A stretch of DNA of 59,035 nt, filler included, from Sluysia triapertura (Eukaryota): assembly GCA_046118255.1 (NCBI GenBank). It is 4 parts of 4 records of this genome, joined end to end, with 100 filler letters (N's around TTAATTAATTAA, not from the genome) between each part and the next. Parts side by side here need not be neighbours in the genome. Positions count along the whole stretch, not along the records: positions 45,491 to 59,035 come from JBJNIA010033600.1; 3 more parts are not named here. One strand, given 5' to 3'. A program made the translations under genes and the position numbers. The notes under the pieces were generated by a model that saw only the letters and a list, made by a program, of their open reading frames with translations, was not told the origin of the DNA and searched no databases. Positions within the stretch are counted from its first letter, which is position 1. The number at the start of each line of letters is the position of its first letter. Of this stretch, positions 45,491-59,035 are shown in pieces.

Positions 45491-45591
45491 AAAGTTAGAC
45501 GGGGCTGATAGCTCAGTGGTAGAGCAGTCCGACTGCGCAGACGATGGTCCCGGGTTCGATCCCCGGTTAGTCCATTTTAGGAAGTCTAACA
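45491..45591 (+). mobile_element. tRNA-containing LTR-like element with a complete tRNA-like unit (45502-45574); probably not a functional tRNA
   Basis: The acceptor stem (GGGCTGA/TTAGTCC), D arm (GCTC-AGTGGTA-GAGC) and T arm (CCGGG-TTCGATC-CCCGG) fold. The anticodon arm does not pair canonically. It is followed by TTTT and AGGAAGTCTAACA. Confidence 0.8.
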
Positions 45592-50502: not shown

Positions 50503-51556
50503 TTATTCATCATTAAAATTAGTTCCCAAACTACTCGAATCATCGGGCCCTAAATTATTAATACTAGGTGCAATTTCTTTAACAAACGATTTAGAACTGT
50601 TACTGTTATCTAAACCAATCCAAACCGTAGAACCAGCAGGAACCTTACTGCAACGCGGTCTTCTTGTTGATTGGCACATACGTTTTTCGTGACTAATAAG
50701 ACTATGTTTTTGACGAAATCGTTTACCACATTTTGTACAACCGTGCGGTTTTTCACCGGTATGACATCGTAGATGTTGAATAACGTGACATTGTTGACGA
50801 AACAATTTACCACAAATACGACAACCAAATGGACGTTCTCCGCTATGCACTCGTTCGTGTGTTTGTAATTGAGCTTTTAATTTAAAGGCACGACCACACA
50901 CATCACATTCAAATGGACGTTCGCCTGTATGTAACTTTTCATGTAATTCTAGGCCAGATTTATCGGTAAATGTACGTGGACAGTCTTTACACTTTAACAA
51001 TGGTTCACTTTCATTATCACTTAAATCACCTATTATTGTAAATGTATTTGGCATTGATAATTCTTTTTCAGTTTTAGTAGAATTAACTTGTTCCACGGTT
51101 TCTGTTGCTGTATCACTTGTACACTGAAATGAGTCATAATAAAACTTTTCAAACACAAACCTGAACATTTGTTATACTTATTGTGCTTTCTTCTTGCTTG
51201 AATTGATCTGGAAACACTGGACAATAATCCATTAAAAATGAATTCGATTTTGGTTCCACATCGTCAGCAGTTGAATGGGCAATGTATTCATTATCATTAA
51301 CATCAAATATATGCTCAATACTTGATAATTTACTCACTGATGTTTTGAGAAAATTAGAATAAAATAGTGCTTGATTAATTTTGTTTTTTAATTCCACAAT
51401 ATCGCTAGATATTTCATCATTTAAATTTTCTAATGCTTTTTTCTGATCACTTATACTGCTAAAACCATCAGCTTTTAAAAAATTGACGTTTTTAGGTTCA
51501 AGAGTATCGGGAAATTTTACATTCCAAGTTTTTATAAACGCATTATAAAAATTCAT
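50503..51556 (-). CDS. Two-exon gene (51556-51161, 51123-50503; 37-nt intron; 338 aa): BCR-like N-terminal oligomerisation coiled coil plus 3 C2H2 and 1 C2HC zinc fingers
   Basis: Exon 1 FYNAFIKTWNVKFPDTLEPK...SISDQKKALENL...IVELKNKINQALFYSNFLKTSVSK resembles BCR 1-70. The junction CAG|GTTTGT...TTTCAG|TGT is phase 0. Exon 2 has TGERPF, SGERPF and TGEKPH linkers. Confidence 0.85.
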
Positions 51557-54500
51557 ATCTAAAGTTTAATATTTCATAATATAAAATATGACACTAAAAG
51601 TAAAATTTTACAGTAAAAAATTAAAATAGAAAATAAAATAAAAGTAAAAAATAAATATAAAAATAAAAACAAATATACAGTATTAATTCAATTATTACAG
51701 TGTTGTAATTTTTTTAAATGATAATATTTATTTTTACTATATTTAAATAATTTCGCGTAATCGTTTAATTTATTAAATTACCAAATTTGTTAAAACAATA
51801 TATAAATAAAATGCTAAATACAATTTTTTAATATATCTAAGTTTAAAGTTGTTAATGTTTGATTATGTATAATTATTATTAGGTTTTCTAATATTGAGCT
51901 TATGCAATATAAGATATTGTAATGATAAATTAGTATAGCATTTTTTTATCAAATGAATGAATTTTAATGTCTTTAAATTACGCTTATTTCACTAATTTAA
52001 TGCTAATAAGATATAGACTAATTATTTGAATTTACGCTGACTGATAACTACATGATCAATTATTGTGATTAAGCTTGTTTGATACGTCAACTTACCATAT
52101 TCTTGATATTATATATTATGAAATTGTAATGTTAGGTACAAATTGGGATTTACTCTTTTTCATTTAATATGAACGAATGTTTTTATCTACAAAAATTGTA
52201 TTATTTTTGTAGCGTTTGAAATATCGCTTCTAAACTATCACATTCTTAATTGATAGATTGTGTGGTAATGCAATATATATTACATTACCAAAATATATAT
52301 TACATTACCAAAACCTACAGCAAAATATTTTTGAGTGGGGTATAGTTACAGTAAGCGTCTTATGTTGTGAAGAGGTTTGTTTCTATAACAATAAGTTAAT
52401 AATTACCTACAAAGTAATTACTTTATTTAATAAATTCTGGAAAAGTAATATAATTAAATTATTATATAATTATGATGTAGAAAATTTCTAACATTTTTAT
52501 TAAATATTTAAATATATTAAATATTTAAATTTATTATCAATATTAAAAAAATAAAATACTTTTATGTTTAAAAATTTTATTTTAAGATTATAAAATTTAA
52601 AACAAATAAAGTTTATCAATATGTTTATCAACATGTCACTGTAACAACAATAAACAAAGAAATATATAAATAGTAAGTATGTTATAAATTTCATTCATTA
52701 AACAATTAAGAACGTTTTAGAAAACAAATTTTTAGAAGTGTAACAGTTCTAAACGAAGACTATAACTTGAGAATTGAAAAAACAAATTACATTGGAAAAC
52801 GGAGATTATAGTTTAAGATTTAGTATAGATTATATTGGAAGTTAGATCGAATTAATTTGATTAAAAGCAGTTATTGATTTGGAGTGACTATATTAAGCTA
52901 ATCGTTAGTTTAATTATTTTTTAAAAGATTTTTTTAAAAAAATTATAAAAGACAGGTAATATTAAACTCAAATTGTCTCGTAATTTCTATTAGTAAATAA
53001 AATCAGTTTTAAAAAATACCAAACAAATATTAATTAATAAAATTAATATTTATAAATACTTGTATAACTTAAGTAACATTGTTAAAATGGGATATCTGAC
53101 GTATTAAACTAAAAACTAACATTGTCTTCCATAATTCATAGATAAATTAAAGTGGAGTTAAATAAATAATTTTCTTTTTATATATAGCGTTTAATATATT
53201 TCTTTTTATTTACTGAATTAGTTTATATTCTGTGTTATTCGTTTTATAGTTTTTGTTCTATATCAAATTTTGACATTAATTTAGTTAACTCGCCTTCGTA
53301 TAATATTTGTTTATTCGTAATTCAAGGTGAGCTTAAATCGTGTATTCCATTTTTACAAAATTGCCAAATTAATATTTTGTAATAGTTACTAAATTATAAT
53401 AAGCCACGTGCTAAGGATGATCCAGTTAATTGACAGAGTTAATAAAAGTTATAAACAAAGAACCTCCAGTAATTATCTTTCGTTAAAACTGCAAAATTCC
53501 ATGTGCTGTCCCTTAATTGAATAAGCCCAGTATCATAGAGGACTCGCATTTAAAACCATATTTAGTTTAATTTAATTTAACTACATTAAATCCTCACATG
53601 TATTTTGATTTAAGATTAATTTGCTTTCGCTGATTGTAAGTACTTATTTTGATTTTAAGACAATCTTTGCTAATTTTAACATTATTTTTATTATTATTGT
53701 TGTTTTTTTAATAATCACTTAAAGTTTATGTAGTTAAAAAAATCAATAATTTGTAAATTAATAATTTAGTAATTGTAAACTTTTACGCGAAATTAATAAT
53801 TATTTATGAAATTAATTTTATTGTTAGAAATGTACATATTTATTTTTTCAAATGTATACATTTATATGATACCCCTAGAATGTATCCTTGCAGATTTATG
53901 ATTCCAGTATTTCTTGGATATAAACTTCTTTGAAATATTTAACTTTTATTCATGATGATTAATATTTATTGTGATTGCTGATAAATTGTATTAATTGTGC
54001 TATAAGTAATCTCAGATTCAATCTTATTTTGATTTTTTGAGTTTTGTATTTCAAGTTATTAAATAATTAAATTATTACTTATAACCAGCATTTTGAAACT
54101 TATCAAAATTTTCTGTGATTATTACGGATTCATGTATTTAAAAAAATTAAATTTTTTCTTAGTTTAAATTTTTAAAACCACAGGAGGTAATGAATTCATA
54201 TAAAACAATTGTATTTATCCCACTGAAAATTGTCATTTTTTGAATAAATGTTTCCAGTTGATTAAATTTAAATGTAGAGACATCAAAATTTTTTTCTCTC
54301 TAGTCAATTATACACAATCTACGTGCACCTCTTAAAATTACTCTTTTGTAAGAATTACCTTCTTTTCAAATAATAACAAATACAACATAACAATAAATAA
54401 TGTATTTAATACATATTTAGAAATACTTTGAAGACGAAATAATATCTACCTTTATTTTTTCCCAAAAAGTTCATCAAAATGTATAAGAATAATTGTTTAA

Positions 54501-57700: not shown

Positions 57701-59035
57701 ATACCTACAGAAAAAAGTTTGTTGTAGATAATAAAGAAGTAAAAGTAAGGCGAAAGCCGCACTACTACTGTAGTTCGTGCACTGTTGTATTGTGCATCAC
57801 CTTGTTTTACTGTTTACAAACGGGAAAAAAGTTTTAATTTTGTTTATATATACATATTTTTACAATTTTTTATATTTTACTCATAAGAACATATTTAATT
57901 CTATGTTATACAATATCAATAAAACAGAGGACATAAAGTTTTTTTATTCAATTAATATTAAATTTCTCATTTTTAACCGAAAAACTCTTTTCTTTTATTG
58001 TTGTGACTTGTTATTAATCTAGGCTAAAAAAGTGATCATTTTTGACGGTCTTGTCGAAAAAAATTGTACATTAAGTAGTTAAAGACATTTTTATTATAAT
58101 ATTTAGTACACATATTTGTTTTTAACAACATTTTTGTAATATATTTAATTACGTTATTTAATTAATAATTCTTTGAAGATAAGCAAAGAATTTGATCATT
58201 GAATAAATTCGATTAGTTACAGATAGTTATGAGAGATAAAACAGTTTATTGCTTTCAATATATAACGAAAATTAGTAGACAAATAATTAATAAATGGAAA
58301 TTGCACGAATAAGTTAAACCATTAGAAAATCAATAGTCTAAGAGTTATTTAATATATAATAGTGAATAAAAGATAAGCAACCGAAATGAATTCAGTAAAA
58401 GAAAATATATCCTGAGAATGAATTAGGTTAGAGAAACATTTCAAATATAAAGAATTCCGTAAAAAATCCTATAAGTACGTCTCTCGAACGAGTGTAAAAC
58501 ATGAATTTTAAGTTTGATATTATTAGAGATATTAATTGATAAGTTAAAGATTATTTTATGAGAGTTAAAGTTAAATAAGTTAAAGTAAGTTAAATAAGTT
58601 AACTATTATTTAGACTAATAGGAAATATTTATTATATTTTAATAATAATAATAATAATAATAATGATAATAATAATAACAAGGCATGTTTCACAATTATT
58701 CACGTGAATAGGATACATAACTTCTTCTGTAATATTTTCTAATGAGGAATTGTTTGGAGTAGCAACATTTTGATTAGCAGTTCTCTTCCTAGTGTGTGGT
58801 GATTCGCCTGGATGAATAATTAATGAACGTGCACTGCCACTGCATTCCGATGTCATACAACAATTCTGAAATGTAGTAGTTGAAACTGGTGGACTGCCTG
58901 ATCCAGCCATAAACAGACTGTCCAGTGTGTCTTGTGTTCCAAGAATTTTACATTTTTTATAAGGATGCAAATCAGAACCGGCATAAAAATCTTGCTCTCC
59001 TATTGTAATAAGATGATTCTGTGTTCCATCTGCTT
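54732..59035 (-). CDS. Unknown protein with one C-proximal TM helix, last two exons (>59035-58680 and 55199-54732)
   Basis: Open frames and a phase-0 GT-AG join (...VNNCETCL|SFNSDDSSK...). Ser/Thr-rich region, then YCLFLFLFFLFLIILLFMLILLLFSLA and a tail of about 55 aa. Confidence 0.7.
56985..58082 (+). mobile_element. piggyBac (PGBD4-like) transposase pseudogene, 3' half, intronic
   Basis: LLDPLLDQGYCLHTDNFYTTPQL, IKWRDKK, KPKLVVDYN, HLDQHLQDY, PLRLTERHFP and a decayed Cys-rich tail; ends near TTAA at about 58082. Confidence 0.92.

What the first reader, a model, noticed from the sequence alone, without database searches (positions are those of the whole stretch)
50503..51556. Natural fusion of a BCR oligomerisation domain to Kruppel zinc fingers
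Seen in sequence: two ORFs that the track lists separately are joined in frame by a clean 37-nt GT-AG intron into a 338-aa protein. Established: human BCR begins MVDPVGFAEAWKAQFPDSEPP...SVGDIEQELERCKASIRRLEQEVNQERFRMIYLQTLLAK, a tetramerising coil that normally sits in front of DH-PH-C2-RhoGAP and that activates BCR fusion oncoproteins. Exon 1 follows the same F..W..FPD..P / S..D....LE / I..L...NQ..F...L.T...K pattern, but here it leads directly to four TGE(R/K)P-linked fingers and a stop. Inference: a lineage-specific transcription factor using the BCR coil as an oligomerisation module, analogous to BTB/SCAN/ZAD, and possibly co-assembling with the host BCR protein. I know of no described protein with this architecture.
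Basis: partly seen in the sequence, partly recalled or inferred. Interest (0 to 1): 0.82.

Follow-up and report, generated by a model that had tools for sequence, protein, structure and literature searches.

The report
BCR-like coil on flatworm zinc-finger protein
This is a real two-exon gene for a four-finger DNA-binding protein, conserved in flukes and tapeworms, whose first 90 residues look, just below formal thresholds, like the self-associating coil at the start of the human BCR protein, a combination nobody seems to have annotated.

Summary
On the minus strand, exon 1 (51556-51161, 132 aa), a 37-nt GT..AG intron (51160-51124) and exon 2 (51123-50506) give a 338-aa protein with four C2H2 fingers.

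It is not a one-off. Orthologues with the same N-terminal domain and the same four fingers occur in Schistosoma, Clonorchis, Paragonimus, Spirometra and Taenia. In S. mansoni the fused ORF lies uninterrupted on about 2.8-kb contigs in 189 collection blocks.

The family signal still points to BCR:
- 13 of the 20 relatives scanned hit PF09036 in one register, at 11.9-21.9 bits against a cutoff of 23.1.
- The family profile's best hit in the whole PDB is 1K1F, the BCR oligomerisation domain, at E=0.0045; the next hit is 0.31.
- Foldseek on the AF2 model returns 1K1F chains as its only matches better than E=6.7.
- The residues of BCR's inter-chain aromatic cluster (F7, W11, F54, Y58) are conserved.

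Oligomerisation itself is untested, because the complex job gave no verdict. No RNA data exist for this organism.

Verdict: probably (about 0.6) a BCR-coil-like oligomerisation module on a flatworm transcription factor. It is a new variant of the BTB/SCAN/ZAD-zinc-finger theme.

The parts
51161..51556 (-). Exon 1, 132 codons, starting at the ATG (MNF...). Holds the N-terminal domain (residues 1-90) and a short linker.
   Evidence: ORF and sequence. The MNF start is conserved in all orthologues. Exhaustive phmmer found 6 flatworm clusters at E 2.7e-12 to 3.1e-06.
51515..51550 (-). Helix alpha1 (residues 3-14), with F7 and W11 invariant and F15 in 16 of 17 members.
   Evidence: AF2 model gives H3-14. 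Column counts on A4. Aligned to BCR F7/W11/F15.
51461..51478 (-). Loop motif LKADxF (residues 27-32; L27, K28, A29, D30 and F32 are invariant). It falls in a stretch that the HMMER alignment deletes in BCR.
   Evidence: Alignments A2 and A4. The 1K1F alignment shows a 6-residue gap here.
51290..51454 (-). Long helix alpha2 (residues 35-89) with a 3-4 hydrophobic repeat at positions 53, 56, 60, 63, 67, 70, 74, 77, 81 and 84. F65 and F69 align to BCR F54 and Y58.
   Evidence: AF2 model gives H35-89 with pLDDT 90-98. Column counts. The alpha2-only profile still ranks 1K1F first at E=0.046.
51124..51160 (-). 37-nt intron, GTTTGT...TTTCAG, phase 0.
   Evidence: Read from the sequence. Two-exon structure also in S. 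japonicum, where the intron is 4.9 kb and phase 2.
50503..51123 (-). Exon 2, 206 codons plus the stop codon (50503-50505).
   Evidence: BLASTP against the S. japonicum orthologue gives 53% identity over 161 aa, E=3e-59.
50674..50997 (-). Four tandem C2H2 fingers (exon-2 residues 43-150). The fourth is C2HC.
   Evidence: Pfam zf-C2H2 and zf-H2C2_2. Finger-by-finger correspondence with orthologues.
50611..50640 (-). Conserved post-finger motif PAGSTVWIGL (AGMTMWI in relatives).
   Evidence: BLASTP alignment and orthologue sequences.

Best explanation
The locus is a two-exon gene for a compact (338 aa) member of a conserved flatworm family of sequence-specific C2H2 zinc-finger proteins. Its first ~90 residues form a short helix, a loop and a long helix. 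This unit is most likely a distant relative of the N-terminal coiled-coil oligomerisation domain of BCR, and at the least it uses the same structural solution.

Proposed mechanism, all inferred. Two chains pair through an antiparallel alpha2-alpha2 coiled coil. It is clamped by the swapped alpha1 helices through an aromatic cluster (F7/W11 of one chain on F65/F69 of the other). Dimers may stack further into tetramers. This would present two to four four-finger DNA-binding units together, as BTB, SCAN or ZAD domains do for other zinc-finger factors.

Shown here: the gene model, the family, the fused transcript in relatives, the sub-threshold but consistent BCR similarity, and conservation of the BCR interface residues. 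Inferred: homology, oligomerisation, and transcription-factor function.
For: Gene model and family:
- Gene model.
- Orthologues: exhaustive phmmer with exon 1 finds only flatworm proteins that carry the same fingers downstream. The finger region is 53% identical to S. japonicum.
- Fused mRNA in relatives: the 587-aa S. mansoni ORF lies uninterrupted on 2.7-2.8-kb contigs, listed in 189 blocks of the collection, while the S. japonicum gene has a 4.9-kb intron. A 645-aa ORF lies on a 3.0-kb contig.
- Selection: over residues 1-90, S. mansoni versus S. japonicum gives dN=0.038 with dS saturated.

BCR similarity:
- The 13-sequence profile hits 1K1F first in the PDB at E=0.015. With 17 sequences this improves to E=0.0045, and the next hit is at 0.31. 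Profile positions 7-76 align to chain residues 7-65.
- PF09036 is hit by 13 of 20 relatives scanned, at 11.9-21.9 bits, always residues 5/6-76/77 onto profile positions 3/4-63 (P0005, a slice starting at family residue 5, matches the corresponding stretch).
- AF2 model: pLDDT 89.9, helices 3-14 and 35-89, against BCR alpha1 5-15 and alpha2 28-67 (PMC11247501).
- Foldseek against the PDB: the only matches better than E=6.7 are four 1K1F chains, prob 0.80-0.92, 24-25% identity. VIA-align aligns 63 of 63 residues at rmsd 2.5 A, Z 5.2. Row 1 of the Atlas shape search is a BCR cluster.
- The BCR dimer is held by F7/W11 on F54/Y58, and E52 is an odd acidic residue at a heptad d position (PMC9795542). 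The aligned family columns are F 17/17, W 17/17, F 17/17, Y/F 17/17 and E/D/Q 16/17.
Against: - The window's own exon 1 has no PF09036 hit at E<=10 and no PDB hit by phmmer.
- No family member reaches Pfam's gathering score (best 21.9 against 23.1).
- Coiled coils attract spurious matches. With alpha2 alone, 1K1F leads only narrowly (0.046 against 0.09 and 0.15), and alpha1 alone gives nothing.
- The most conserved motif of the family, LKADxF, falls in a 10-11 residue insertion that BCR lacks.
- Shape alone is unspecific: generic long helices reach Z 6.7.
- Foldseek's score includes sequence, and AF2 may remember 1K1F, so the structural lines are not independent of the sequence signal.
- The dimer prediction scored 0.07, giving no verdict.
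- The one BCR-like Atlas cluster that matched is mostly Chordata, which leaves a large phyletic gap.
- There is no RNA evidence in this organism.
Confidence: 0.6

Rival explanations
1. The gene and family are as described, but the N-terminal domain is a flatworm-specific helical module unrelated to BCR. The likeness would be convergence or coiled-coil background. Its role could be cofactor recruitment or some other mode of assembly.
For: All BCR matches are below curated thresholds. The window sequence itself does not match. The margin is narrow for alpha2 alone, and alpha1 alone gives no signal. The invariant LKADxF motif has no BCR counterpart. The shape is generic. The only BCR-like Atlas cluster found is chordate.
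Against: BCR is the top hit both ways, out of 177,635 PDB sequences and among 24,736 Pfam models, always in the same register. The E-value improved as the family alignment grew (0.015 to 0.0045). Both domains start at residue 1 with F7/W11/F15/P16 at identical numbers. All four aromatic interface residues and the unusual acidic d position are conserved (PMC9795542).
Confidence: 0.32
2. Exon 1 and the finger exon are separate genes. In this reading exon 1 is the first exon of a BCR-like RhoGEF/GAP gene, or a stand-alone 135-aa product, and the fingers form a nested gene.
For: No RNA run exists for this organism. Unspliced, exon 1 ends three codons past the junction. Several cestode and fluke annotations list exon 1 alone as a 174-232-aa protein.
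Against: The N-domain and fingers are collinear in one ORF on intron-free contigs of S. mansoni, in 189 collection blocks, and of another fluke. The annotated full-length proteins of eight or more species show the same. The exon-1-only proteins end exactly at the intron of the two-exon gene. The five other ORFs of 70 aa or more that were scanned gave no DH, PH, C2 or RhoGAP match, though small exons would be missed.
Confidence: 0.03
3. The window copy is a decaying or neofunctionalised paralogue. It is half the length of its relatives and lacks the second conserved exon-1 motif, so its N-domain may no longer work like theirs.
For: It is 338 aa against 582-717 aa in relatives. The LLPQCIASSLI..SASPLL motif is missing. 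It has the lowest identity in the family (28-41%) and is one of the members with no PF09036 hit. C73, G78 and A79, which are near-invariant elsewhere, are replaced.
Against: Both exons are open, with an intact start, splice sites and stop. All twelve invariant N-domain columns and all zinc ligands are kept. The AF2 model is confident.
Confidence: 0.05

Closest known systems
BCR N-terminal coiled-coil oligomerisation domain (Pfam PF09036 Bcr-Abl_Oligo; PDB 1K1F)
   Same: - Sits at the extreme N-terminus.
- Short helix, loop and long helix (3-14 and 35-89 here, against 5-15 and 28-67 in BCR).
- F7, W11, F15 and P16 at identical residue numbers.
- The aromatic partners F54 and Y58 and the acidic d-position E52 have conserved counterparts.
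- Reciprocal best sub-threshold hits.
   Different: - Followed by C2H2 fingers rather than the DH-PH-C2-RhoGAP region.
- A 10-11 residue insertion carries the invariant LKADxF motif.
- alpha2 is about 15 residues longer.
- Scores stay below Pfam's gathering cutoff.
- Found in flatworms rather than chordates.
- The oligomeric state is untested.
BTB/POZ-, SCAN- and ZAD-zinc-finger transcription factors
   Same: The architecture and presumed logic are the same: an N-terminal self-association module followed by a linker and a C-terminal array of Krüppel-type C2H2 fingers.
   Different: There is no sequence or fold relation. No Pfam BTB, SCAN or ZAD hit was found. The module here is a two-helix coiled-coil unit, not a globular domain or a zinc-binding ZAD.
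Flatworm-specific ZFP-1 / ZFP-1-1 family (Wendt et al. 2018, PMC5927768)
   Same: Both are C2H2 zinc-finger regulators confined, as far as is known, to flatworms.
   Different: ZFP-1 proteins have three fingers with QRSNLQR and RKDHLxR recognition helices and no conserved region outside the fingers. This family has four different fingers and a conserved N-terminal domain. It is not the same family.

Membership tests
Pfam PF09036 Bcr-Abl_Oligo | hmmscan score at or above the gathering cutoff (23.1 bits) | tested here: not met
   The window's exon 1 gives no hit at E<=10. Relatives score 11.9-21.9 bits, the best at E=1.7e-4.
Pfam PF09036 Bcr-Abl_Oligo | N-terminal alpha1 (about residues 5-15), loop, and long alpha2 (about 28-67) | tested here: met
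   The AF2 model has helices 3-14 and 35-89, pLDDT 89.9. All 63 residues of 1k1f_H align at rmsd 2.5 A. BCR helix limits are from PMC11247501.
Pfam PF09036 Bcr-Abl_Oligo | Inter-chain aromatic cluster F7/W11 on F54/Y58 (PMC9795542) | tested here: met
   The aligned columns are F7 17/17, W11 17/17, F65 17/17 and Y/F69 17/17. The window has F, W, F and F.
Pfam PF09036 Bcr-Abl_Oligo | Forms an antiparallel swapped dimer that stacks into a tetramer | tested here: inconclusive
   Complex prediction with 2 copies scored 0.07 against a mark of 0.32, giving no verdict. This needs AF-multimer or biophysics.
BCR/ABR protein family | DH-PH-C2-RhoGAP region downstream of the coil | tested here: not met
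   The domain is followed by a linker and four C2H2 fingers in the window and in all orthologues.
Flatworm N-domain + four-finger ZNF family (unnamed; e.g. S. mansoni A0A3Q0KC57, C. sinensis G7Y5I6) | MNF..F...W..KFP start, LKADxF loop, long helix with an invariant L and F, then four specific fingers and an AG.T.WI tail | tested here: met
   phmmer E 2.7e-12 to 3.1e-06 on exon 1. All twelve invariant columns are kept. The finger region is 53% identical over 161 aa.
Flatworm ZFP-1 family | Three fingers with QRSNLQR and RKDHLxR helices | tested here: not met
   The window has four fingers with TDKSGLELH, KLKAQLQTH, RQQCHVIQH and RQKHSLISH helices.

The most novel reading that the evidence does not exclude
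The BCR tetramerisation coil is not a chordate invention. On this reading it is an old bilaterian module, or alternatively one acquired by the ancestor of parasitic flatworms from a vertebrate host. In flukes and tapeworms it was wired to a DNA-binding array, giving a previously unrecognised class of oligomeric zinc-finger transcription factors in major human parasites.
Probability: 0.15. Interest if true: 0.8.

Novelty: new variant of a known kind. Interest (0 to 1): 0.55.

Why it matters
If the N-terminal domain really is a BCR-type coil, three things follow.
- It extends a domain known almost only from one vertebrate signalling protein, and famous for activating BCR-ABL, to invertebrate transcription factors.
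- It adds a fourth kind of self-association module to the BTB/SCAN/ZAD-zinc-finger repertoire.
- It gives a testable handle on an unstudied regulator present in Schistosoma, Clonorchis, Opisthorchis, Paragonimus, Taenia and Spirometra: residues F7, W11, F65 and Y/F69.

It also flags a recurrent annotation error. In several tapeworm and fluke genomes the domain exon is called as a separate 175-aa protein with misleading automatic names, which hides the architecture.

Tried and rejected
- Complex prediction, two copies of residues 1-90: score 0.07, no verdict. This is not evidence either way.
- RNA evidence: the look-up of sequencing runs found no RNA run. Laying the single DNA/unknown run showed only short contig pieces and nothing about splicing.
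- Finger-based search to carry the family beyond flatworms: it was swamped by vertebrate poly-zinc-finger proteins, 3755 hits.
- ESM-Atlas feature search: no usable hit.
- VIA-align wide search: only generic long helices, Z up to 6.7.
- alpha1-only profile of 24 positions: no PDB hits, because it is too short.
- The idea that this is the flatworm ZFP-1 family: rejected on finger number and recognition helices.
- Literature searches for PF09036/Bcr-Abl_Oligo outside BCR, and for invertebrate BCR coils: nothing relevant.
- Pfam on the five other ORFs of 70 aa or more in the piece that were scanned: nothing above threshold.
- Not done, following the operators' notes: no search or fold of the joined 338-aa product (the exons were searched apart by reference), and no typed human BCR sequence was used for pairwise or hhalign comparison.

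Full report
**1. Observation**

Searches show two minus-strand ORFs, 51149..51556 and 50503..51168. The sequence reads AAT GTT CAG|GTTTGT...TTTCAG|TGT ACA. Removing the 37 nt at 51160..51124 joins 132 codons of exon 1 (phase 0) to 206 codons of exon 2 and a stop codon.

Exon 2 carries four C2H2 fingers (zf-C2H2 8.2e-17, zf-H2C2_2 1.9e-22). The linkers are TGERP, SGERP and TGEKP, and the last finger is C2HC. The piece is very AT-rich: 25% GC overall and 33% in the coding sequence. The joined product was neither typed, searched nor folded.

**2. What it belongs to**

An exhaustive phmmer search with exon 1 against 1.84 billion representatives gave only six hits, at E 2.7e-12 to 3.1e-06. Those that carry a source name come from Schistosoma, Paragonimus and Spirometra/Sparganum. 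Three are unnamed assemblies.

Word-indexed searches added more species:
- Heterobilharzia, Calicophoron and Clonorchis.
- S. curassoni, Anoplocephala, Taenia, Mesocestoides and Dibothriocephalus.
- Cluster look-ups added many further Schistosoma species, Opisthorchis and Hydatigera.

Full-length members (582-717 aa) start with the same domain: MNF..F...W..KFP, an invariant LKADxF, then a long helix. They end with the same four fingers and an AG.T.WI tail. The window's finger region is 53% identical over 161 aa to the S. japonicum protein, E=3e-59. So this is the compact orthologue, or a paralogue, of a conserved fluke and tapeworm family. It is not a private fusion. The public names are generic ('zinc finger protein 84/182', 'C2H2-type domain-containing protein'), and the precomputed Pfam lists show only finger families.

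**3. Is the fusion real at transcript level?**

No RNA run exists for this organism, and the one run laid was uninformative. The evidence comes from relatives:
- The S. japonicum gene has the same two-exon layout: exon 1 covers residues 1-177, followed by a 4.9-kb intron.
- The identical 587-aa S. mansoni protein is encoded without interruption on 2.7-2.8-kb contigs with UTR-like flanks, and the index lists it in 189 blocks of the collection.
- A 645-aa fluke orthologue sits on a 3.0-kb contig. Both sets of contigs are best read as spliced mRNA.
- The 174-232-aa 'proteins' of Paragonimus, S. curassoni, Taenia and others end exactly at the intron. They are exon-1-only gene calls.

The idea that exon 1 belongs to a RhoGEF/GAP gene is therefore very unlikely. 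The window's intron is phase 0. The S. japonicum intron and that of the closest relative's genomic contig (L002) are phase 2 and sit right after the C-P-D-x-I/L-K motif. The window's intron lies 13 codons after what looks like the counterpart of that motif (CPVFPDQFK). That match is an eyeball reading, because the alignment does not resolve this linker. Strict positional homology of the intron is therefore not shown.

**4. The BCR question**

*Against.* The window's exon 1 gives no PF09036 hit even at E<=10 and no PDB hit by phmmer.

*For.* The signal appears at family level.
- A 13-sequence profile of residues 1-90 searched against 177,635 distinct PDB sequences puts 1K1F, the BCR oligomerisation domain, first at E=0.015.
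- After adding cyclophyllidean tapeworm sequences (17 rows), this improves to E=0.0045 and 20.7 bits, with the next hit at 0.31.
- In the other direction, PF09036 is hit by 13 of 20 relatives scanned, at 11.9-21.9 bits against a gathering score of 23.1. It is usually the top family. The register is always the same: residues 5/6-76/77 onto profile positions 3/4-63. This holds in flukes and tapeworms independently.
- Split profiles show that alpha2 alone still ranks 1K1F first, but narrowly (0.046 against 0.09 and 0.15). alpha1 alone is too short to score. In the full profile alpha1 adds about 4 bits and widens the gap to about 70-fold.

**5. Structure**

AF2 with the family alignment gives a confident model: pLDDT 89.9, helices 3-14 and 35-89. 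BCR has alpha1 at 5-15 and alpha2 at 28-67 (PMC11247501).
- Foldseek against 350,542 PDB chains returns five rows. Four are 1K1F chains (prob 0.80-0.92, TM 0.50/0.67, 24-25% identity). The fifth is noise at E=6.7.
- VIA-align aligns all 63 residues of 1k1f_H at rmsd 2.5 A, Z 5.2.
- Row 1 of the ESM-Atlas shape search is a BCR-like cluster, 100% PF09036.

Caveats apply. Shape alone is unspecific, since generic helices reach Z 6.7. Foldseek uses sequence as well as shape. AF2 may have learnt 1K1F. These lines are therefore not fully independent of the sequence signal.

**6. Function-linked residues**

PMC9795542 states that the BCR dimer's alpha1-alpha2' contact rests on F7/W11 of one chain and F54/Y58 of the other. 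It also notes that E52 is an exceptional acidic residue at a heptad d position. In the HMMER alignment these positions fall on family columns 7, 11, 65, 69 and 63. Their composition in 17 sequences is F 17, W 17, F 17, Y 11/F 6, and E 8/Q 6/D 2/A 1. The window has F, W, F, F and A.

The core positions I42, L45, V49 and L59 align to I53, L56 (invariant), I/L60 and L70. Both proteins begin at Met1 with F7, W11, F15 and P16 at the same numbers. This is the most persuasive point, because it is exactly the BCR-specific clamp, not generic heptad hydrophobicity, that is shared.

There are differences. A 10-11 residue insertion carries the family's most conserved motif, LKADxF. alpha2 is about 15 residues longer. 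The domain is under strong constraint in schistosomes: dN=0.038 over residues 1-90 with dS saturated.

**7. Mechanism (inferred)**

The domain would form an antiparallel alpha2 coiled-coil dimer clamped by swapped alpha1 helices. The dimers may stack into tetramers. This would bring together two to four four-finger DNA-binding units, in analogy with BTB-, SCAN- and ZAD-zinc-finger factors. The only direct test available here, a two-copy complex prediction, gave no verdict (0.07). Co-assembly with the organism's own BCR is pure speculation.

**8. Comparison and novelty**

The gene is not a formal member of PF09036, because the threshold is not met. It is not a BCR/ABR protein, because there are no DH, PH, C2 or GAP domains. 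It is not the flatworm ZFP-1 family, which has three different fingers and no N-domain.

Literature searches for the Pfam identifiers and for invertebrate BCR coils found nothing relevant. The databases carry no N-domain annotation for this family. I therefore rate it a new variant of a known kind, namely zinc-finger factors with an N-terminal self-association module. Moderate confidence (about 0.6) applies to the BCR-type assignment and high confidence to the gene model and family.

The phyletic gap invites two readings that I cannot separate: an ancient, fast-evolving module, or acquisition by the parasites' ancestor. The one BCR-like Atlas cluster that matched is mostly chordate, and every named family member is a parasite of vertebrates. 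The window organism is unidentified. Its closest relative by N-domain comes from an equally AT-rich genomic contig, 23.5% GC.

Noticed in passing
window 45502-45574 (+): A tRNA-like gene at the very edge of the piece. Rfam tRNA scores 45.6 bits, but ARAGORN cannot name the anticodon ('tRNA-???', anticodon (tg) at position 33). It may be a pseudogene, a tRNA-derived repeat or an unusual tRNA.
   Followed up: no
P0138, P0140, P0160 (Taenia asiatica, Mesocestoides corti, Hydatigera); P0005 (Paragonimus); P0136 (S. curassoni): In several tapeworm and fluke annotations the N-domain exon is called as a separate 174-232-aa protein. UniRef gives some of them misleading automatic names ('Component of oligomeric Golgi complex 6/8', 'DASH complex subunit DAM1'). 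These are split gene models of the zinc-finger family.
   Followed up: partly
P0015 (Clonorchis sinensis CSKR_103270, 515 aa): This looks like a chimeric gene model. Residues of about 110-200 are the N-domain, minus its first 14 or so residues. They are flanked by unrelated low-complexity sequence, and there are no fingers. The neighbouring model CSKR_103271 (P0156) carries the fingers.
   Followed up: no
Relatives, exon 1 residues ~125-177 (alignment A3); absent from window 51161-51286: A second conserved block, LLPQCIASSLI.SASPLLAA...PF.FPS...F.CPD.IK, lies between the N-domain and the intron in flukes and in weaker form in tapeworms. The window protein lacks it apart from a possible remnant (CPVFPDQFK). 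It may be a further interaction motif lost in this compact version.
   Followed up: partly
window 52352-52500: Contigs of the only run holding the locus pile up here at a summed word depth of about 210-230, against 0-20 elsewhere. One contig skips 70 nt between 52335 and 52406. This suggests a high-copy repeat in the AT-rich upstream region.
   Followed up: no
window 58632-58970 (-), including 58640-58678: A 112-aa ORF ends in a (TAA)13 microsatellite read as a poly-Ile run. It has no Pfam match and may or may not be an exon of a neighbouring gene.
   Followed up: partly
L002 (contig in SRR31175833): The closest N-domain relative (P0001, 36% identity) lies on a genomic contig of 23.5% GC with 18% GC flanks. 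It has a GTGAGT donor right after the CPDFLK motif. It comes from an unnamed organism as AT-rich as the window's, perhaps from the same under-sampled flatworm group.
   Followed up: partly
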